The notes under the pieces were generated by a model that had not been told where the DNA came from, did no database searches, and was given only the letters and a program-made list of their open reading frames with translations. The translations under genes were made by a program, and so were the position numbers. Shown one piece after another: positions 3,047-16,008 of a stretch of DNA of 64,000 bases (position 1 is the first letter of the stretch; each line of letters begins with the position of its first letter). The DNA lies in the IMG/VR virus record IMGVR_UViG_3300049215_000771, positions 124,001-188,000 of that record. One strand, 5' to 3'.

Positions 3047-3241
3047 ATGCTGTTGAAGAATACTGCGATTGGCGATGTTGAAGTTCAAGATGGCGACGAG
3101 AAGGAAGCCAGAGCCTTCATCGAAAGCCTGGCGGCACGAGGCCAGATCGCTATCGAGGGCCAGGAAGAAGGACGCCACACTACCCACAAGATCGTGGTGG
3201 AAGATGGCGTCCGCAAGCTGGAGAGAGTGAGGTTCTTCTGA
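3047..3241 (+). CDS. hypothetical protein
   Basis: AAGGAG SD before ATG 3047. Confidence 0.7.
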   Translation: MLLKNTAIGDVEVQDGDEKEARAFIESLAARGQIAIEGQEEGRHTTHKIVVEDGVRKLERVRFF

Positions 3242-3537
3242 TGAAGATGATTTCTGAGCGAACCTACAAGTTCTTCCGTGAACAGTACGAACGGGTCGTT
3301 CACGACTGGTTTGACGACCCGGATGACCAGTTCACGGGCTGGACCCACGCCGATCTGTTGGATTGGTGGGAAACCCTTCAGGTTGCTGCCAAAGACCTGG
3401 ACCTGGACTTCTGGAAGATGGTCCGGGACGAAGAAGCGGCGGATTGCACCGAGTACGAGATCAACCGTGTCAAGGCCATGCTGAAGAAAGCGGGCCACCC
3501 GGAGTACATCAACTATGAGCCTGACCCCGATCAGTGA
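3241..3537 (+). CDS. hypothetical protein
   Basis: TGATG-coupled ORF. Confidence 0.7.
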   Translation: MKMISERTYKFFREQYERVVHDWFDDPDDQFTGWTHADLLDWWETLQVAAKDLDLDFWKMVRDEEAADCTEYEINRVKAMLKKAGHPEYINYEPDPDQ

Positions 3538-3877
3538 AGCCGAGGCCCGCCGCCTCATTATCAGTGGGACGGCGGGCTACTGGTCCATTCATCCTCGCTC
3601 GGTTCCTGTGCCGAACGAACATCAAACGATTTTACGGTTGCAGGGCCAGTTGTTCATTGTTCCTGCTTCTCGTTTGGAAGTTGCTTTCGCCGGCGCTCTT
3701 GGCGAAATTGGTGGACGGCAGAAAGGTGCTTTCTACATTAAGTGCAGTGATGAAGAAATCACCGCCCTCGCCAAGCAGGAAATGGAAACAAAAAGTGCCT
3801 ACCACGATGGCGTGATGTATCATTGCCCGGAGAAACAACAAGAACCGCCTGAGAAGTTTTTTCTGTTCGAGGACTGA
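3515..3877 (+). CDS. hypothetical protein
   Basis: ORF in operon. Confidence 0.65.
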   Translation: MSLTPISEAEARRLIISGTAGYWSIHPRSVPVPNEHQTILRLQGQLFIVPASRLEVAFAGALGEIGGRQKGAFYIKCSDEEITALAKQEMETKSAYHDGVMYHCPEKQQEPPEKFFLFED

Positions 3878-3878
3878 T

Positions 3879-4214
3879 ATGGAAGAAGAACAAGAACGGG
3901 CGTTGCTTTGCCTCCGTTGCGAGGATATGCCCGAACCGAATACGGACGGAACACTGAAGAATAAGTGTTCCGAATGCGGGGCTGCAATATGGGTCAGCGC
4001 CGCCGGCCAGAAGTTGATGGCCGATGGCGTCAAGCCCATCTGCAATCGCTGCGCTGAACCCGTTGTGAACGACGGCGAAACGAAGATGGAAGTGCCCGCC
4101 GAAGTCTTGAAGGAGATGTTCCAGCAAGTCGTTGTTGATGCTGGACGACACGGCGCAAAGCCCAAAGACATTTTCCGCATGGTCAAGGAAATTTACGAAC
4201 TTCCCAGGAAGTAG
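3879..4214 (+). CDS. putative zinc-binding protein
   Basis: Three CxxC pairs (CLRC, CSEC, CNRC). Confidence 0.65.
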   Translation: MEEEQERALLCLRCEDMPEPNTDGTLKNKCSECGAAIWVSAAGQKLMADGVKPICNRCAEPVVNDGETKMEVPAEVLKEMFQQVVVDAGRHGAKPKDIFRMVKEIYELPRK

Positions 4215-4222
4215 ACGGTCTT
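4197..4222 (+). promoter_or_regulatory. class-II promoter (GAACT-N16-GTCTT)
   Basis: Matches the ten-copy GAAC-N-GTCTT motif; 20 nt upstream of ORF 4242. Confidence 0.65.
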
Positions 4223-4241
4223 CCTTGCAGGAGGAAATACC

Positions 4242-4613
4242 ATGCAAGACTACCTGCAAGATCGTGTTGAAACGCTGCAATCCCTGTCCGGCCTTCGAGT
4301 TACGGTGAGGGAAGAGAAGGGACAAAACGTCTTCGAGTTTTTCCACGGCAAGGAATCCGTGAAAACTTGCTTCACCTACGACAAGGCCAAACTGTTCGCT
4401 GAGGGCATCGAATTCGTCCACCGGGTCAAATTCACGCAGGAAACCCTGTTCGTGAATATGCCGCTCCGGGAGCTTGGTTATGTCTTCGAGTTGCCGACCT
4501 TCATCTACATGAGCCGGGATTCGGCGGCGCAAGATTTACTCAAGGGCGAGGAAACGCTGACGTTGGCTGAAGCCGTTGCCCGTGTGATTTTATCTCACAG
4601 GCAAGATGCCTAG
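4242..4613 (+). CDS. hypothetical protein
   Basis: AGGAGG SD. Confidence 0.75.
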   Translation: MQDYLQDRVETLQSLSGLRVTVREEKGQNVFEFFHGKESVKTCFTYDKAKLFAEGIEFVHRVKFTQETLFVNMPLRELGYVFELPTFIYMSRDSAAQDLLKGEETLTLAEAVARVILSHRQDA

Positions 4614-4643
4614 TTTACAAAGCTGGGCGGCTCGTGGTATAAT
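4614..4643 (+). promoter_or_regulatory. sigma70-type promoter
   Basis: TTTACA-N18-TATAAT with extended TG. Confidence 0.75.
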
Positions 4644-4667
4644 CGGGCAGCCCGATAGGAGAATGGG

Positions 4668-5183
4668 ATGGCCCGGCACTACCTACCCTCGCTGAAGGAC
4701 ACCAAGGCTATCGCCCCTATGGGTGAGAAGCTGGCGGATATTTTCTTGAAGAGCGCCCTGATGGAACGACATCACGGCTTTCAGGAATGGACCACCAACG
4801 ACGCCAAAGAAATGGGGCCAGGCGCTCTGTTATTGTGGCGTCGAATGGCGATTTTTGGCGGGCATAACCCTGCCAAAGTCAGCATCGGTGCTGCCTTCGT
4901 TGTCGTAATGCAGATCGAGGTTCCTGGTGATGCTGTCCTGTGGGCTTTCACGCTCAACAGGTTGTGGAACCAGGGTGGGCCGGTTGATCTGGAAGCCTTG
5001 GCGACCGCTTTTCCTGATGGTTTCCCCACCGAGCGGGGTAAGGAAGAAATTTGGGACGCTCAGAAGTGTTCCGATTGGGGTGAAGAGCCAAGTAACGACA
5101 ATATGCTGGATCACCCCGAATTTTTGACCGATACGGAAAACTTCATCGAGAAGAAGGAATGGTGCAAATGGCTGGTAACTTGA
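4668..5183 (+). CDS. hypothetical protein
   Basis: AGGAG SD, follows promoter. Confidence 0.75.
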   Translation: MARHYLPSLKDTKAIAPMGEKLADIFLKSALMERHHGFQEWTTNDAKEMGPGALLLWRRMAIFGGHNPAKVSIGAAFVVVMQIEVPGDAVLWAFTLNRLWNQGGPVDLEALATAFPDGFPTERGKEEIWDAQKCSDWGEEPSNDNMLDHPEFLTDTENFIEKKEWCKWLVT

Positions 5184-5482
5184 CACACGCAACGGGAGAA
5201 ACTTTCAAGGCCGAGGTTTTGGACTCGGCTGAACCCGTCCTGGTTGATTTTTACGCCGACTGGTGTGGTCCTTGTCGGGCGCTCACTCCGACCCTGCAAG
5301 AACTTTCTGTCGAGGGCGTCAAGGTCGTGAAGGTGGACGCCGAGCAGGAGCGGGAATTGTGCAGCGAGTACGGTGTTAGCGCCCTGCCGACGCTGCTTGT
5401 GGTAAAGGGCGGCGAAGTAAAGGCGAAACTGGTCGGCCTCCAAAACAAGGCCCGGCTGGTGGAAGCCCTCAGTTTGGGATAA
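5168..5482 (+). CDS. trxA: thioredoxin
   Basis: VLVDFYADWCGPC active site, cis-Pro motif (ALPT), about 104 aa. Confidence 0.95.
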   Translation: MAGNLTHATGETFKAEVLDSAEPVLVDFYADWCGPCRALTPTLQELSVEGVKVVKVDAEQERELCSEYGVSALPTLLVVKGGEVKAKLVGLQNKARLVEALSLG

Positions 5483-5484
5483 CC

Positions 5485-5751
5485 ATGACCGATTTTTGGG
5501 ACGTACACGGCGTCTGGTTCATCATCTTCATGTGTTTCTTCCCCCGGCTGACCATGCTGTTTGCAACAGCCGGGGGCGGCGGCTTCTTCTACTGGTTGGG
5601 TTGGTTGTTCGCTCCGAGGCTTACCGTTGCTATTTTGGCAACGTACTTCTACGGACATACCAACACCGTCCTCGTTGTCTTCACCTGGCTTTGGGCTTTT
5701 GCCGGTGAAAGCACGGAAAAAACTGTTGTCAAGAAGGGGACCGTGGGATGA
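5485..5751 (+). CDS. small membrane protein
   Basis: Three hydrophobic segments. Confidence 0.7.
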   Translation: MTDFWDVHGVWFIIFMCFFPRLTMLFATAGGGGFFYWLGWLFAPRLTVAILATYFYGHTNTVLVVFTWLWAFAGESTEKTVVKKGTVG

Positions 5752-6005
5752 AACTCATCTACGTTTATACCGACGAACACGGGCGAGAGCGTGGCTTCGT
5801 CAACGAGAACGACGCCAGCCTCGCCAGGGGTTATGGCTCTGGTCTTGACCGACCTCCTGTTCGTGAGATCAAGGTGTTCGAGAACTACGGCGAATTTGCC
5901 GATGAACGCAACCAGGCCATTATCGACAATGCCCTCGCCAAACTGACGGCCCAGGAGAAGAAACTGCTGGGCTTGACGTTCCCGGAGAAGCCTGACGAAG
6001 AATAA
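5748..6005 (+). CDS. hypothetical protein
   Basis: ATGA-coupled ORF. Confidence 0.7.
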   Translation: MKLIYVYTDEHGRERGFVNENDASLARGYGSGLDRPPVREIKVFENYGEFADERNQAIIDNALAKLTAQEKKLLGLTFPEKPDEE

Positions 6006-6012
6006 CGTCTTG

Positions 6013-6310
6013 GTACGCAACTACTCGAACGTCGTCCCGCATGTAGGAGGCGGCGAGTGTGTACGGCCCAGGGCGGGAAGGAGTTGCAAATGCCTCGTGG
6101 ACCCCCGTAGGAACCAACAAGAACTTCATACTGAGGGGCATCTGATGGCTCTGTATTGCAATCGTGCCAGAGCCGCCCCATTTTCCGCATGACTGATTGA
6201 AGAAGGCTCTTGGTTCCAACCTGGAGGGCGTCATGCACGCACGAGAACCCCCGTAAGATCATACACCCATGCTGTGGGGCCAGGGACGGCTATCCCTGGC
6301 CCCTGTATTT
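6013..6310 (+). ncRNA. candidate structured ncRNA or cis-regulatory leader (about 300 nt)
   Basis: Gap without a credible ORF; several stems (6013-19/6058-64, 6031-36/6049-54, 6135-39/6175-79, 6147-52/6169-74, 6187-93/6230-36), an 8-bp long-range pair 6110-17/6210-17 and a terminal hairpin. Confidence 0.6.
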
Positions 6311-6311
6311 T
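6276..6311 (+). terminator. intrinsic terminator
   Basis: GGGGCCAGGGA-CGGCTA-TCCCTGGCCCC (11 bp) followed by TGTATTTTT. Confidence 0.75.
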
Positions 6312-6330
6312 TCACCTTCAGGAATTCAAC

Positions 6331-6624
6331 ATGGCTGAAATCATTGTCCGAGTCCATCATCACTGGAAAGACAACGAAGAAAGTTTGGTCAAGCGCATCG
6401 CCCGTGTCGTCTGCCATGACGATTCGATGTGTGAGCAGCAGAAAATGGGCTACAAGTGGGGGCTGAATACCAGCGGCAATGACTGGTGGGCCTCCGGGAT
6501 TGAGAAAAACGACAAACATTACTTCATCAAAGTGGCCTACCGTTACGGACACGGCGGGCGCAATGCCGCAATGATGGAGGCGCTGAAGATTTTCTTGGAG
6601 TGGGAACTTGGACCGCTCGAATAA
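6331..6624 (+). CDS. hypothetical protein
   Basis: AGGA SD before ATG 6331. Confidence 0.7.
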   Translation: MAEIIVRVHHHWKDNEESLVKRIARVVCHDDSMCEQQKMGYKWGLNTSGNDWWASGIEKNDKHYFIKVAYRYGHGGRNAAMMEALKIFLEWELGPLE

Positions 6625-7078
6625 CTTCTGGTTCGTGTACTACCGGAACGTCAACCTCATCAGCATAGATGAGATTACGAACGGCCTGGTGTGGAAACGT
6701 GTGCCTGAACTTCCGCATGGTTTCCTCACCAGGGAGGATGCGCTTGGCTGGCTCGAACTGCTGGCGGACGATAAGTTGGTGGAAATTCCACAACGCACAA
6801 CAACCTGGAGTGGAAGCCGGTATTCTTACAAGAAACCGGAGGAACCAATCTATCGTTTCGCCAAGTTCCCTGCGTATTTCTACAAGGTATTTCCAGCCGG
6901 GATCATATACACCGAAGTATCCGCTCCCGACACAAATAGCCCTTGGAACGTCGGGGTGCTGCGAGAAATGGTTGGACACCCCAGGCCGGAAAGCATTCAC
7001 CCGCCCAGGCGGTCCAAACTCCGAATCGCAATTGATTCTCCCTTAGCCAGTTGTGGCGGCGGCATCGTGGAAATTTGA
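6608..7078 (+). CDS. hypothetical protein
   Basis: TTG start with GGAG SD; start uncertain. Confidence 0.55.
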   Translation: MDRSNNFWFVYYRNVNLISIDEITNGLVWKRVPELPHGFLTREDALGWLELLADDKLVEIPQRTTTWSGSRYSYKKPEEPIYRFAKFPAYFYKVFPAGIIYTEVSAPDTNSPWNVGVLREMVGHPRPESIHPPRRSKLRIAIDSPLASCGGGIVEI

Positions 7079-7096
7079 TGATTCTTGCCTAACTAC

Positions 7097-7125
7097 TTGA
7101 CAACCGCCAAAAACCGAAGTAGTAT
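7097..7125 (+). promoter_or_regulatory. sigma70-type promoter
   Basis: TTGACA-N17-TAGTAT. Confidence 0.8.
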
Positions 7126-7164
7126 AGGCGTGTGGAAACGAGAAACCTCAAACCGGAGAAAACC

Positions 7165-13543: not shown

Positions 13544-13768
13544 ATGACTACAATGCTTGCAGGTTTCTCGAACCAAAAAATGGCGCAAGATTTGTTGGGT
13601 GTTCTCCAACAAACCTTCCCACAAAATGAATTCGTCCTTGACGGGAACAGCATCGGCATCAAGGCCCATGAAGTCCTTTGTCTCCCCATCAAGAATTTCG
13701 TCCTGGGCTACACCCTGGGAATGCAGAAAGGCATGTCGGTGATGTTGCATGAACCTTCGACCAATTAA
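13544..13768 (+). CDS. hypothetical protein
   Basis: GAGG SD; fills gap before argS. Confidence 0.5.
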   Translation: MTTMLAGFSNQKMAQDLLGVLQQTFPQNEFVLDGNSIGIKAHEVLCLPIKNFVLGYTLGMQKGMSVMLHEPSTN

Positions 13769-15044
13769 CCCGGCTCACGGTGTCGGCTTCTACTCGATGG
13801 AACAACTGCCGCAGTTTGCTGGCAAGTACGTTGAGAAGAACGTGGGCCGCTATTGGAATTATCTTTTCACACCCACCAACTACGATTGGCCCGAACCGTG
13901 GCTGGAAGTGGCGAAAGATCATATCAACGCCGAGTACATCATTGACGGTTTTAGCCCAAACCTCAACAAATCCCTTCATGTTGGGCATCTACGCCAGCTT
14001 GCCCTCGCAAAAAGCCTGTCGGCTATCTTTCGCAAGGCGAAGTTTGTGGCCTTCCTTGGCGCAAGCCTGGGTGTCTACAGCTATGCCATGAAGGAACTCA
14101 ACGAGTGGTTTGAGTTTGTTGGTTATAAGCCGGAACTCTACTACGACGTGCTGATGCCCCGTGACCTGGTGGAACATCACAAAGTCATCGAACACGAAGC
14201 CCATGTGTGGGATGGTCCCAATGGGCCGGTGATCGTTGTTCGCAGCGATGGTCGCCCTACCTACGCCTTCCACGATCTTGCCTTTGCCAAGATGGTCGGC
14301 CCCACTCATTACATCACTGGAGCCGAGCAGAAGGAACATTTCGAGCGCCTGGGCCTGGGTGACAAGCATCTCATCATGGGGCTTGTGCTGGGCAAAGATG
14401 GCAAGAAGATGAAGTCTCGTGAGAGTGATCTTGAAGATGCCAAGGCTGCTGCTGTCATGGATGAAATCATCAGCAAGCTGGACGATTCCTGTACCGAGAA
14501 GAAGAAATTGGCCTGGAACATCCTGGCCTGGAACTTTCTCGTGGCCGGTCGCCAGCAAAACGTCAAGTACAACCTGGAGGAATGGACCAACCCGGATCAG
14601 GCTGGCCTCTACATCACCTACACCTATGCCCGTGTTCGCAAGGCGTTGAAGGGCATTGAGTGGGCGCACATTCCTCCCGCCAACATGAAAGCCATCAAGA
14701 AGCACTTCCAGTGGGATGGGCTGGGCGCAGAACATTGGGATGAGGCGTGTGAGAAGTGGTCCCCAACCGACCCGGACCCGCAGTACGATCTCACCCAGGC
14801 TGATGTTGACCTGTTGGGTTTCTCGGAATACTACCGCTACTATCTGAAGCGTTGCACCGACACAATGGACCCGACGCATATGGCCAACTACGCCCACGAC
14901 CTGGCACGTCGCCTGGGCAAAGCCTACCACGCCGAGAAGATTCAGGGCGGTCGCTACGGGTTCCAATACGCTATGGAGCGAGCGAAAAGTATGCTTCGCC
15001 AGTGCATGTGGTATTTGGGCATGTTCGATTTGGAGCAGGTTTAA
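13749..15044 (+). CDS. argS: shortened arginyl-tRNA synthetase (class Ia)
   Basis: FSPNLNKSLHVGHLR (HIGH), RSDGRPTYAFHDLA, GAEQKEHF, GKKMKSRE (KMSKS), GLYITYTYAR (DALR domain). Confidence 0.85.
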   Translation: MNLRPINPAHGVGFYSMEQLPQFAGKYVEKNVGRYWNYLFTPTNYDWPEPWLEVAKDHINAEYIIDGFSPNLNKSLHVGHLRQLALAKSLSAIFRKAKFVAFLGASLGVYSYAMKELNEWFEFVGYKPELYYDVLMPRDLVEHHKVIEHEAHVWDGPNGPVIVVRSDGRPTYAFHDLAFAKMVGPTHYITGAEQKEHFERLGLGDKHLIMGLVLGKDGKKMKSRESDLEDAKAAAVMDEIISKLDDSCTEKKKLAWNILAWNFLVAGRQQNVKYNLEEWTNPDQAGLYITYTYARVRKALKGIEWAHIPPANMKAIKKHFQWDGLGAEHWDEACEKWSPTDPDPQYDLTQADVDLLGFSEYYRYYLKRCTDTMDPTHMANYAHDLARRLGKAYHAEKIQGGRYGFQYAMERAKSMLRQCMWYLGMFDLEQV

Positions 15045-15910: not shown

Positions 15911-16008
15911 AATCTCACCAGACTACTATAACGGCACAGGAACACTTCTTGTGCCGTTTTTGTTTCCAGAGTTCTATATACCACGGAAGCCTTTTCAAAG
16001 GAGTGGCC

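What the first reader, a model, noticed from the sequence alone, without database searches (positions are those of the whole stretch)
6013..6311. A 300-nt structured RNA with a probable pseudoknot and terminator ahead of ORF 6331
Non-coding gap with a long 5' hairpin (GTACGCA/TGTGTAC, GTCGTC/GGCGGC with G-U pairs), GGGAA followed by a T-loop-like UGCAAAU hairpin (6075-6096), a GGGGC/GCCCC plus GGCTCT/AGAGCC stem, and GGAACCAA (6110-17) pairing perfectly with TTGGTTCC (6210-17), which lies inside the loop of GCATGAC/GTCATGC, so a pseudoknot. ACCCCCGTA is repeated (6101, 6247). An alternative pairing GCGGGAA/TTTCCGC (6073-79/6182-88) competes with one stem, as in a switch. An 11-bp terminator ends it 28 nt before the next ATG. 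The GGGAA/T-loop is reminiscent of the cobalamin riboswitch core, but I cannot find a convincing B12 box. Inference: an unknown riboswitch-like attenuator or sRNA.
Basis: partly seen in the sequence, partly recalled or inferred. Interest (0 to 1): 0.62.

Follow-up and report, generated by a model that had tools for sequence, protein, structure and literature searches.

The report
Phage spacer with two ribosome-arrest mini-ORFs
The 325-base gap in this giant phage genome is transcribed and non-coding, but it shows no sign of being a riboswitch; its only non-random content is a strong terminator and two tiny ribosome-binding-site-led reading frames ending in Arg-x-Pro-Pro-stop, a motif known to jam bacterial ribosomes, so it may be a translation-sensing control element.

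Summary
The window is part of a 532.7-kb huge-phage record from moss metagenomes. All six frames lack coding signal. Three metatranscriptome runs cover it, all stopping at 6263-6271 just before the terminator hairpin, with nothing over the next ~880 nt.

The "300-nt structured RNA" is not supported.
- Rfam gives no match.
- Folding energy equals that of random windows of this genome (z 0.0; +0.8 without the terminator).
- The 7-8-bp helices, the "pseudoknot" and the 9-mer repeat occur at chance frequency.
- No diverged homologue exists, so covariation cannot be tested.

Only the terminator stands out (z -4.6).

The repeated ACCCCCGTA is, in both copies, the end of a Shine-Dalgarno-led mini-ORF: MPRGPP* (6090-6110) and MHAREPP* (6233-6256). 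These are the only intergenic SD-led mini-ORFs ending RxPP-stop in the whole genome. Two occurred together in 0 of 20,000 shuffles. RGPP is the strongest published RAPP-like ribosome-arrest core. The phage proteome itself contains none of six such motifs.

My best reading, an inference at about 0.42 confidence, is a ribosome-arrest leader or spacer rather than a ligand-sensing RNA. How it acts on downstream genes is unresolved.

The parts
5748..6005 (+). Upstream ORF (85 aa), last ordinary gene before the gap. Its TAA stop (6003-05) is in frame with uORF1.
   Evidence: Codon log-odds +0.47; weak PHROG hit; only identical copies in the protein collection.
6013..6064 (+). 5' hairpin (GTACGCA/TGTGTAC and GTCGTC/GGCGGC). 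It contains AGGAGG 6045-50 and buries GTG 6057, the start of the possible 17-codon form of uORF1.
   Evidence: Present in the MFE and centroid. z only -1.6 against genome windows. GTG 6057 has P(unpaired) 0.04.
6078..6110 (+). uORF1: SD AAGGAG 6078-83, 6-nt spacer, then ATG 6090 CCT CGT GGA CCC CCG TAG 6110 = MPRGPP*. An alternative start is GTG 6057 behind AGGAGG, giving a 17-residue peptide (GTG read as Met) that ends ...QMPRGPP*.
   Evidence: Listed among the SD-led mini-ORFs. RGPP is the strongest RAPP-like arrest core (PMC12992588).
6110..6217 (+). Helix a (GGAACCAA 6110-17/TTGGTTCC 6210-17) enclosing hairpin 6135-6179. Its 5' arm starts at the last base of the uORF1 stop and would be covered by a ribosome arrested on uORF1.
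   Evidence: P about 0.9 in the ensemble, falling to 0 when 6087-6119 is blocked. Not beyond chance as an 8-bp complement. Domain z -0.9.
6145..6192 (+). Third SD-led mini-ORF (GAGGGG 6133-38, ATG 6145; MALYCNRARAAPFSA*). It lies inside hairpin 6135-6179 and has no recognised motif.
   Evidence: Codon log-odds of the enclosing 60-aa ORF is -0.15.
6187..6236 (+). Helix b (GCATGAC 6187-93/GTCATGC 6230-36). Its 3' arm contains the uORF2 start codon. It crosses helix a.
   Evidence: Sequence. P 0.02 in free RNA, rising to 0.38 in the terminated transcript (6006-6311) and 0.08 in the read-through RNA when a ribosome is modelled on uORF1. Model only.
6223..6256 (+). uORF2: SD GGAGG 6223-27, 5-nt spacer, then ATG 6233 CAC GCA CGA GAA CCC CCG TAA 6256 = MHAREPP*.
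   Evidence: The Ala-to-Glu substitution in the core RAPP motif is partially permissive for arrest in ApdP.
6276..6311 (+). Intrinsic terminator: 11-bp stem (9 G-C pairs), 6-nt loop, tail TGTATTTTT.
   Evidence: Hairpin -25.7 kcal/mol. z -4.6. P(formed) 0.98-0.99 in every modelled state. RNA contigs of three runs stop at 6263-6271 and none covers 6272-7152.
6315..6333 (+). CCTTCAGG 6315-22, complementary to CCTGGAGG 6220-27 (helix c), overlapping the SD AGGAA 6320-24 of ORF6331, whose start is ATG 6331.
   Evidence: Helix c has P 0.74 in read-through RNA and 0 when uORF2 with its SD is held by a ribosome. SD3 P(unpaired) moves only from 0.45 to 0.61. Model only.
6331..6624 (+). Downstream gene (97 aa), a conserved huge-phage protein of unknown function. 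In relatives it has no upstream gap.
   Evidence: AF2 pLDDT 90.7. Only generic alpha/beta fold matches, Z<=6.4.
4614..4643 (+). Sigma-70-like promoter (TTTACA-18-TATAAT with TG), a possible start of the unit that ends at the terminator.
   Evidence: RNA contigs also cross it (X9 4522-4682), so transcription from further upstream exists too.

Best explanation
The gap is a transcribed, translated-but-non-protein-coding spacer of a huge-phage operon. It carries two minimal cistrons, each with a canonical Shine-Dalgarno sequence and ATG, ending in Arg-Gly-Pro-Pro-stop (uORF1, 6090-6110) and Arg-Glu-Pro-Pro-stop (uORF2, 6233-6256). A strong intrinsic terminator (6276-6311) follows 20 nt after the second stop. 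[quoted passage not shown] The parked ribosomes would then set the fate of the RNA around them. A ribosome on uORF1 covers GGAACCAA 6110-17 and dissolves the long-range helix to 6210-17. A ribosome on uORF2 holds CCUGGAGG 6220-27, which in read-through RNA otherwise pairs with the segment overlapping the Shine-Dalgarno of ORF6331. This would couple expression of ORF6331-7078 to ribosome arrest, as in SecM-secA or ApdA-secDF. Alternatively the parked ribosomes could shield an otherwise untranslated 270 nt from Rho or nucleases, as in CruR. Shown: the non-coding gap, transcription up to the terminator, the terminator, the two SD-led RxPP-stop mini-ORFs and their statistical improbability, and avoidance of RAPP-like motifs in the phage proteome. 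Inferred: that they are translated, that such short peptides arrest, and what the arrest controls.
For: The sequence reads as stated. Over both strands of the 532.7-kb genome, 1524 SD-led mini-ORFs of up to 40 aa exist and only 4 end RxPP-stop. Three of these (two stop sites) lie in this gap, and the fourth is antisense inside a gene. None occurs among 1611 mini-ORFs in 1.06 Mb of other phage or metagenome loci. In 20,000 dinucleotide shuffles of the gap, at least one such mini-ORF appeared 11 times and at least two never. SD-led starts are enriched in the gap: 4 against 0.8-1.1 expected, P 0.02-0.03. SD is used by this genome's genes: 32% of called starts against 7% of all ATGs. The two copies differ at three of 15 positions in the R-x-P-P-stop segment: CGT/CGA (synonymous), GGA/GAA (the tolerant x position) and TAG/TAA (stop to stop). 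Upstream they share only the SD core and the ATG. The phage proteome (152,840 aa) has 0 RGPP, RAPP, RAGP, RSPP, RDPP or REPP, where about 10.5 are expected in total. R.PP occurs 13 times against 25.6 expected, whereas A/E/D/L.PP are as expected. Literature: RGPP gives the most robust, EF-P-refractory arrest and is the most excluded tetrapeptide in many phyla; Ala-to-Glu in the ApdP RAPP motif (giving REPP) is partially permissive; such motifs sit near the C-terminus of small ORFs upstream of regulated genes (PMC12992588). The RAPP mechanism and sufficiency of minimal RxPP are reported in PMC10951233. RAPP arrest controls transcription termination in CruR (PMC9426467). In this genome strong terminators sit 4-60 nt after a stop codon. 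This terminator does so only if uORF2 counts as an ORF: 20 nt, against 271 nt from ORF 5748-6005. RNA contigs from three metatranscriptome runs cover the gap, at the highest depth of the locus in two of them, and end at 6263-6271.
Against: There is no diverged homologue, so there is no evolutionary test. All copies found are identical, and pattern scans for the two-uORF arrangement found nothing in viral, metagenome or genome collections. M-x-RGPP-stop mini-ORFs are not a recurrent phage or bacterial device: 0 in viral contigs against 1 for the AGPP control, and 1 hit in 596 Gb of genomes, which is no more than chance would give. [quoted passage not shown] Here only 2-3 residues precede the motif, unless the structurally buried GTG 6057 is used. 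No antiterminator competes with the terminator, which forms in every ribosome-occupancy state modelled, and the modelled effect on the ORF6331 SD is small. The nine identical bases, including the synonymous third positions, could reflect an RNA- or DNA-level motif or a local duplication rather than peptide-level selection. The motif was recognised after looking, so the P values need a post-hoc discount. Contigs give neither strand nor true RNA ends.
Confidence: 0.42

Rival explanations
1. The gap is a plain 3' untranslated trailer. The 270 nt would be leftover spacer (for example, the remnant of a lost gene or of a rearrangement joint) between the last gene of an operon and its constitutive terminator. 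The mini-ORFs and helices would have no function.
For: No excess structure. No homologue. ORF6331 relatives sit in other gene neighbourhoods without any gap, so the junction is lineage-specific. Terminators followed within 30 nt by the next gene are common in this genome, so the terminator's position needs no special explanation. The RNA contigs fit a trailer that ends at the terminator.
Against: Two SD-led RxPP-stop mini-ORFs occurred together in 0 of 20,000 shuffles and are unique in the genome. Every other strong terminator checked lies 4-60 nt after an ORF stop, so 271 nt of dead spacer would be the exception. No frame shows residual coding signal of a decayed gene.
Confidence: 0.27
2. One reading: a ligand- or factor-sensing structured RNA (a riboswitch-like attenuator with a pseudoknot) controls read-through of the terminator into ORF6331.
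For: The position is right, with a terminator 27 nt ahead of a gene that has no promoter of its own. Helix a and hairpin 6135-79 are stable in the ensemble. Terminated RNA is abundant while downstream RNA was not detected.
Against: No Rfam family matches, even at E<=10. Folding z is 0.0 to +0.8 against genome windows. The helices, the crossing helices and the repeat are at chance frequency. Helix b has P 0.02. No alternative pairing approaches the terminator's -25.7 kcal/mol. There is no covariation data, and the downstream genes are of unknown function with no metabolic link.
Confidence: 0.1
3. The gap yields a stand-alone or 3'-UTR-derived small RNA of about 250-300 nt, stabilised by the terminator hairpin, that acts in trans on host or phage mRNAs.
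For: The gap has the highest contig depth of the locus in two of three RNA runs, with coverage gaps separating it from upstream genes in all three. It has a strong 3' hairpin.
Against: No sigma-70-like promoter lies at its 5' side. One RNA contig runs from inside the upstream gene (5907) into the gap. There is no paralogue or homologue. Contig depth cannot rank abundance.
Confidence: 0.12
4. The mini-ORFs act as host-directed minigenes, like lambda bar. Their translation would load ribosomes or release peptidyl-tRNA(Pro), tying up tRNA-Pro or ribosomes. Alternatively they would report tRNA-Pro supply to the phage, which itself encodes six tRNA-Pro genes.
For: Both are SD-led ORFs of 6-7 codons whose last sense codons are the same CCC CCG pair. 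The genome encodes tRNA-Pro GGG x2, CGG x2 and UGG x2. Toxic 3-8-codon minigenes that act by tRNA sequestration are known (PMC2490762; lambda bar is from general knowledge).
Against: There is one locus per genome and modest RNA depth. There is no evidence of drop-off. The conserved Arg at -4 is explained by RAPP-type arrest, not by drop-off.
Confidence: 0.07

Closest known systems
RAPP-like ribosome arrest peptides (ApdA, ApdP, SecM RAGP, CruR, and the Streptomyces RAPP/RGPP uORFs)
   Same: The core is R-[A/G]-P-P at or near the C-terminus of a small SD-led ORF lying upstream of a co-directional gene. RGPP is the strongest known core, and Glu at the second position is partially permissive. The motif is avoided in the organism's own proteome. 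In CruR the arrest governs transcription termination in the following intergenic region (PMC12992588, PMC10951233, PMC9426467).
   Different: Known members are 100-200 aa proteins, mostly with a signal peptide or membrane segment that relieves the arrest, and they need an N-terminal adjacent region in the tunnel. Here the ORFs have 6 and 7 codons (17 at most). They come as a tandem pair, are encoded by a phage, are followed by an intrinsic rather than Rho-dependent terminator, and have no evident release mechanism. Arrest is untested.
Leader-peptide transcription attenuators (trp, his, pheA type)
   Same: A short SD-led leader ORF with a run of identical regulatory codons lies shortly upstream of an intrinsic terminator and a downstream gene.
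   Different: No antiterminator hairpin overlapping the terminator could be found. The stop of uORF2 is 20 nt from the stem, so a ribosome at the Pro codons does not reach it. The downstream genes are unrelated to proline.
Phage lambda bar minigenes
   Same: Phage-encoded, SD-led ORFs of a few codons in a non-coding region.
   Different: bar ORFs have two codons and act by peptidyl-tRNA drop-off in Pth-deficient hosts. Nothing here tests drop-off.
Cobalamin riboswitch and other Rfam cis-regulatory RNAs
   Same: Only the position ahead of a gene and the presence of a terminator.
   Different: No covariance-model match at any threshold tried, no B12 box, and no excess structure.

Membership tests
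Cobalamin riboswitch (Rfam RF00174) or any other Rfam family | A match to the family covariance model at its gathering score | tested here: not met
   0 matches in the whole window at gathering. At E<=10 on 5900-6450 there were only four chance-level hits (best E 1.7, 14.9-17.2 bits against gathering scores of 35-59), none to a riboswitch.
Structured non-coding RNA (generic) | Folding energy clearly below that of composition-matched controls | tested here: not met
   z -0.9 against shuffles; z 0.0 (whole gap) and +0.8 (without the terminator) against random genome windows.
Structured non-coding RNA (generic) | Compensatory base changes in homologues | not testable with these tools
   Only identical copies were found. 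There were no diverged homologues in phage records, viral contigs, metagenome contigs or genome contigs.
H-type pseudoknot | Two crossing helices that are both stable and more than chance would give | tested here: inconclusive
   Both complements exist. However, 39% of random genome windows have at least as many crossing 7-bp pairs, and helix b has P 0.02 in the nested-only ensemble.
Intrinsic (Rho-independent) terminator | A G+C-rich hairpin followed by a T run, with transcripts ending there | tested here: met
   An 11-bp stem with 9 G-C pairs and tail TGTATTTTT; -25.7 kcal/mol; z -4.6. RNA contigs of three runs stop at 6263-6271 and none covers 6272-7152. Exact 3' ends cannot be read from contigs.
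RAPP-like arrest peptide | Core motif R-[A/G]-P-P (or a permissive variant) with an irreplaceable Arg | tested here: met
   uORF1 has RGPP. uORF2 has REPP, the A-to-E variant reported as partially permissive.
RAPP-like arrest peptide | The motif lies at or near the C-terminus of a small translated ORF (SD plus start codon) upstream of a co-directional gene | tested here: met
   AAGGAG-6 nt-ATG and GGAGG-5 nt-ATG, with the motif immediately before the stop, and ORF6331 downstream on the same strand. Translation itself is not shown.
RAPP-like arrest peptide | An N-terminal adjacent region in the exit tunnel that supports the arrest | tested here: not met
   Only 2 (uORF1) or 3 (uORF2) residues precede the motif, or 13 if the structurally buried GTG 6057 is used. 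The published statements on whether a minimal RxPP suffices conflict.
RAPP-like arrest peptide | Demonstrated ribosome stalling with R-x-P in the P site and Pro in the A site | not testable with these tools
   This needs toeprinting, in vitro translation or ribosome profiling.
RAPP-like arrest peptide (monitoring substrates) | A signal peptide, membrane segment or sensor domain that releases the arrest | tested here: not met
   The peptides have 6-7 (at most 17) residues, leaving no room for such a domain.
Leader-peptide attenuator (trp type) | An antiterminator pairing that competes with the terminator and depends on ribosome position | tested here: not met
   The best upstream duplexes with single terminator arms are -19.1 and -17.5 kcal/mol, distant and discontinuous. 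The terminator has P 0.98-0.99 with ribosomes modelled on uORF1, on uORF2 or on neither, and it is also present in the MFE with both occupied.

The most novel reading that the evidence does not exclude
A huge phage carries a tandem pair of minimal, 6-7-codon RGPP/REPP ribosome-arrest cistrons as a self-contained sensor of the host's translation state (peptidyl-transfer rescue capacity such as ABCF factors, or Pro-tRNA supply, which the phage itself supplements with six tRNA-Pro genes). It would use the parked ribosomes to gate RNA structure and the expression of the genes behind an intra-operonic terminator. This would be the first arrest-peptide regulator reported from a phage in the literature searched here, and the shortest RAPP-type arrest unit.
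Probability: 0.15. Interest if true: 0.75.

Novelty: new variant of a known kind. Interest (0 to 1): 0.5.

Why it matters
RAPP-like arrest peptides have so far been described as bacterial proteins of about 100-200 residues that monitor secretion, membrane insertion or metals. If a 6-7-codon ORF ending in RGPP-stop can park a ribosome, the minimal arrest unit is far smaller than assumed. It would also be invisible to gene callers. Phages would then join the users of this device, with consequences for how 'non-coding' spacers in huge phage genomes are read. A literature search on arrest peptides, bacteriophage and uORF returned no phage example. If the arrest does not occur, the finding is an ordinary operon trailer with a terminator. 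In either case the riboswitch reading is not supported by the tests that could be run.

Tried and rejected
- **Rfam.** The search at gathering score and at E<=10 found nothing usable.
- **tRNA/tmRNA.** The scan of the window found none.
- **Phage GenBank records.** blastn of 5700-6700 gave no match.
- **Paralogues in the genome.** blastn (word size 7) of the gap against the 532-kb genome found none.
- **Similarity in fetched loci.** blastn of the gap against the fetched loci and nhmmer against them found nothing.
- **Relatives via flanking proteins.**
  - ORF6331 homologues exist at 46-86% identity, but they have no upstream gap and sit in a different neighbourhood.
  - The closest relative, at 86% identity, lies on a 1080-nt contig cut inside the gene.
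  - The upstream 85-aa protein has only identical copies.
- **Pattern scans.**
  - ACCCCCGTA-N(122-152)-ACCCCCGTA in viral contigs gave 48 hits, with no further similarity to the gap.
  - The synonymous-tolerant two-uORF pattern and a relaxed version found 0 in metagenome contigs. The relaxed version also found 0 in viral contigs and in genome contigs.
  - AGGAG...M-x-RGPP-stop in viral contigs gave 0, against 1 for the AGPP control.
  - GGAG...MPRGPP-stop in 596 Gb of genomes gave one hit, no more than chance would give, in an A+T-rich spacer of a Proteobacteria MAG.
  - The RGPP-stop pattern was searched in records behind related loci. Only one record was held, and it had no hit.
- **Coding hypotheses.**
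  - The 60-aa ORF 6010-6192 has negative codon log-odds, no family hit and no homologue.
  - The minus-strand ORFs 5885-6262 and 5920-6234 also score negatively.
  - A decayed gene is rejected because no frame shows local coding signal.
- **Stop-codon recoding.** The genome encodes CUA- and UCA-anticodon tRNAs. However, in-frame coding continuation after TAG or TGA is not enriched, so table 11 was kept.
- **Rho-utilisation site.** There is no C>G region in the gap.
- **Antiterminator search.** RNAduplex and constrained folding found nothing convincing.
- **Function of ORF6331.** The AlphaFold model is confident, but the PDB matches are only generic.
- **Function of ORF 6608-7078.** Pfam, PHROGs and the ESM Atlas gave nothing.
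- **Gap-length statistics.** My crude gene caller was unreliable for these. It missed small genes, so the figures were discarded.
Full report
**Context**

The window is bases 124001-188000 of a 532,729-bp IMG/VR virus record. The same DNA lies on a 673-kb metagenome scaffold. It occurs in moss and plant metagenomes and metatranscriptomes.

The genome is a huge phage. It has densely packed small genes of mostly unknown function, an ArgRS-like gene, a thioredoxin and an ArdC-N homologue. It also carries 56 tRNA genes outside the window.

Around the finding, a run of + strand genes (3241 to 6005) ends at TAA 6003-05. The next + strand gene starts at ATG 6331. That start is fixed by alignment with five homologous proteins from other huge phages.

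**Checking the observation**

The terminator is an 11-bp, 9-G-C stem at 6276-6303 followed by TGTATTTTT.

The gap is non-coding:
- A codon-usage log-odds trained on this genome's long ORFs is +0.14 to +0.47 for the flanking genes. It is at or below about 0.1 in all six frames in every 90-nt window across 6000-6270.
It has no PHROG hit and no homologue among 5.8 billion clustered proteins.

The gap is transcribed. Contigs from three distinct metatranscriptome runs lie on 5983-6268, 5907-6271 and 6026-6263. All stop 5-13 nt before the terminator stem, and no RNA contig covers 6272-7152. Contigs give neither strand nor true ends, and DNA carry-over cannot be excluded. Still, the shared limit at the foot of a + strand terminator fits + strand RNA that ends there.

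**Is it a structured RNA?**

The tests that could be run are negative, and the decisive one, covariation in homologues, could not be run.
- Rfam has no match at gathering score in the whole window. At E<=10 on the region it gives only chance-level hits, none to a riboswitch.
- The minimum free energy of 6006-6330 has z -0.9 against dinucleotide shuffles.
- Against random windows of the same genome, regressed on G+C, z is 0.0. Without the terminator it is +0.8, that is, slightly less stable than average.
- The two best hairpins, picked after the fact, reach only z -1.6 and -2.1. The terminator alone reaches z -4.6.
- At least the observed number of crossing 7-bp helix pairs is found in 39% of random 325-nt windows of this genome, and at least one direct 9-mer repeat in 34%.
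- In the partition function the helix GGAACCAA/TTGGTTCC (P about 0.9) and the hairpin 6135-79 (P 0.94) are stable. The second pseudoknot helix has P 0.02 (the calculation allows only nested pairs, so it cannot score the two crossing helices together).

Covariation cannot be examined because all recovered copies are identical and no diverged homologue was found anywhere:
- GenBank phage records;
- the phage's own genome;
- related loci reached through both flanking proteins;
- pattern scans of viral, metagenome and genome contig collections.

In the relatives that carry the ORF6331 homologue, that gene follows other genes with no gap and in a rearranged neighbourhood. The spacer is therefore specific to this lineage.

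**What the repeat really is**

Reading the two copies of ACCCCCGTA in frame shows that each is the end of a tiny ORF with a canonical ribosome-binding site.
- uORF1 is AAGGAG (6078-83), 6 nt, then ATG CCT CGT GGA CCC CCG TAG, which gives MPRGPP* (6090-6110).
- uORF2 is GGAGG (6223-27), 5 nt, then ATG CAC GCA CGA GAA CCC CCG TAA, which gives MHAREPP* (6233-6256).
- uORF1 also has an in-frame GTG at 6057 behind AGGAGG, giving a 17-codon form. That start is buried in the 5' hairpin (P unpaired 0.04).

Both peptides end Arg-x-Pro-Pro-stop. The statistics are as follows:
- Over both strands of the genome there are 1524 SD-led mini-ORFs of up to 40 aa. Only four end RxPP-stop. Three of these (two stop sites) are in this gap, and the fourth is antisense inside a gene.
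- None occurs among 1611 such mini-ORFs in 1.06 Mb of unrelated loci.
- In 20,000 dinucleotide shuffles of the gap, at least one appeared 11 times and at least two never.
- SD-led starts as such are enriched: 4 against about 1 expected, P 0.02-0.03.
- This genome's genes do use SD sequences.

Between the two copies, the three differences within the R-x-P-P-stop segment are one synonymous Arg change, one change at the tolerant x position, and TAG to TAA. Upstream, only the SD core and the ATG are shared.

I recognised the motif after looking, so these P values deserve a discount. Even a hundred-fold discount leaves them small.

**Why RxPP matters**

Published work is directly relevant.
- R-A-P-P and especially R-G-P-P are core motifs of bacterial ribosome-arrest peptides (ApdA, ApdP; RAGP in SecM).
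- The Arg is irreplaceable. Gly at position 2 strengthens the arrest. Glu, Asp, Ser and Pro there are partially permissive in ApdP.
- The arrest is refractory to EF-P.
- RGPP is the most under-represented tetrapeptide in many bacterial phyla.
- The motifs tend to lie near the C-terminus of small ORFs upstream of regulated genes (PMC12992588; PMC10951233).
- In CruR of Bordetella, RAPP arrest keeps Rho from terminating transcription in the following intergenic region (PMC9426467).

In keeping with this, the phage's own predicted proteome of 152,840 residues has no RGPP, RAPP, RAGP, RSPP, RDPP or REPP, where about 10.5 are expected in total. It has half the expected R.PP, whereas A.PP, E.PP, D.PP and L.PP are as expected. 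The only SD-led ORFs with RGPP or REPP in the genome are the two mini-ORFs in the gap.

**A structural regularity of the genome**

About 34 strong intrinsic terminators were found. They lie 4-60 nt after the stop of an ORF and are often within 30 nt of the next co-directional gene. Two apparent exceptions turned out to be small SD-led ORFs that my crude caller had missed. The terminator at 6276 is 271 nt from the stop of ORF 5748-6005 but 20 nt from the stop of uORF2. It therefore obeys the rule only if uORF2 is treated as a cistron.

The closeness of the terminator to ORF6331 is usual for this phage, so position alone does not make it an attenuator.

**Mechanism**

*Shown:* a transcribed non-coding spacer, a strong terminator that ends most of the RNA detected in the samples, and two non-random SD-led RxPP-stop mini-ORFs.

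*Inferred:* ribosomes initiate on them and arrest at the Pro-Pro codons.

Modelling the consequences with ViennaRNA gave the following:
- A ribosome on uORF1 (covering about 6087-6119) removes the helix 6110-17/6210-17. In the terminated transcript (6006-6311) this raises the helix that hides the uORF2 start codon from P 0.02 to 0.38. In the read-through RNA the rise is only to 0.08.
- In read-through RNA, CCUGGAGG 6220-27 (containing the uORF2 SD) pairs with CCUUCAGG 6315-22 (overlapping the ORF6331 SD) at P 0.74. A ribosome holding uORF2 abolishes this pairing, but the ORF6331 SD gains little (P unpaired 0.45 to 0.61).
- The terminator forms in every state, and no antiterminator was found. 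A trp-type attenuation mechanism is therefore not supported.
- There is no C-rich, G-poor stretch suggesting a rut site.

I therefore commit to ribosome arrest as the working principle, at about 0.42. I leave the output open between three options:
- unmasking of downstream translation, as in the SecM/ApdA paradigm;
- shielding of the spacer from Rho or nucleases, as in the CruR paradigm;
- RNA stabilisation.

The common 3' limit of the RNA contigs (6263-6271) lies close to my estimate of the leading edge of a ribosome arrested on uORF2 (about 6263-6268). That estimate is reasoned from the usual +15 to +17 nt reach of a ribosome beyond the first P-site base; it is not a tool result. The same limit also coincides with the foot of the G+C-rich hairpin, so it does not discriminate.

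**Main weaknesses**

- There is no evolutionary replication. The arrangement is an orphan, and M-x-RGPP-stop mini-ORFs are not a recurrent device in viral contigs or bacterial genomes.
- The authors of the RAPP work state that the motif alone is not sufficient and needs an adjacent N-terminal region. An earlier screen, cited by Morici et al., found minimal RxPP sufficient. With only 2-3 residues before the motif, arrest is an open experimental question.
- The perfect identity of nine bases, including synonymous positions, could reflect a nucleic-acid-level motif or a small duplication.

**Rivals**

- A functionless trailer with a constitutive terminator (0.27).
- A stand-alone or 3'-UTR-derived small RNA (0.12).
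- Host-directed minigenes of the lambda bar kind, or a tRNA-Pro sensor (0.07).

**Comparison and novelty**

The element works, if at all, like a RAPP-type arrest-peptide uORF. It meets the core-motif, SD/start and position criteria of that family. It fails the criteria of an N-terminal supporting region and a release domain, and the arrest itself is untested. I therefore do not file it as a member, only as a possible minimal variant.

It is not a member of any Rfam family. A literature search for arrest peptides in bacteriophages returned no phage example.

- Read laying was given 5,501 letters, under the 6,000 limit.
- No alternative genetic code was applied.
- No step needed referral.

Noticed in passing
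Whole genome G000, outside the window (genome 145-121540 and 472882-497080; the nearest genes are about 2.5 kb upstream of window position 1): ARAGORN finds 56 tRNA genes. They include six tRNA-Pro (UGG, CGG and GGG, two each), three tRNAs with anticodon CUA (amber-suppressor-like, called 'Pyl') and one with UCA (called 'SeC'). A crude test found no enrichment of in-frame coding continuation after TAG or TGA, so recoding is not shown. uORF1 ends in TAG.
   Followed up: partly
window 4614-4643 (+): A near-consensus sigma-70-type promoter, TTTACA-18-TATAAT with an upstream TG, lies just ahead of ORF 4668-5183. RNA contigs also cross it, so it is not the only source of transcripts.
   Followed up: partly
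Whole genome (about 34 sites), e.g. window 15930-15958: Strong intrinsic terminators lie 4-60 nt after an ORF stop and are often 3-30 nt before the next gene on the same strand. Intra-operonic terminators with presumed read-through therefore seem to be a general feature of this phage.
   Followed up: partly
window 6003-6110 (+): The TAA stop of ORF 5748-6005 is in frame with uORF1, and 34 codons stay open up to TAG 6108. Read-through of TAA would append a tail ending in RGPP-stop. This may be coincidence (the chance of the open frame alone is about 0.2).
   Followed up: no
window 6331-6624 (+) and 6608-7078 (+): ORF6331 belongs to a small family conserved in huge phages (invariant WW...KV.YRYG.G). 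Its AF2 model is confident (pLDDT 90.7) but gives only generic alpha/beta fold matches. In the closest relative (86% identity) it keeps the same downstream neighbour (61% identity). In more distant relatives it sits beside different genes, whose homologues are scattered elsewhere in this genome.
   Followed up: partly
window 13749-15044 (+): A 431-aa protein has arginyl-tRNA synthetase catalytic and DALR anticodon-binding domain hits. Its nearest phage matches (28% identity) are in two ~635-kb uncultured phage genomes.
   Followed up: no
window 5159-5482 (+): A thioredoxin-domain protein lies in the same + strand gene run as the gap, upstream of the mini-ORFs.
   Followed up: no
genome 273117-273495 (outside the window): A 13-mer recurs at 273117 and then three times at 84-nt spacing (273315, 273399, 273483), suggesting a tandem repeat. 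It was seen only as weak blast hits to the gap.
   Followed up: no
L066 1139-1169 (Proteobacteria MAG JAIYCX010000057.1): This is the only other GGAG-led MPRGPP-stop mini-ORF in 596 Gb of prokaryote genomes. It lies in an A+T-rich spacer and is no more than chance would give.
   Followed up: partly
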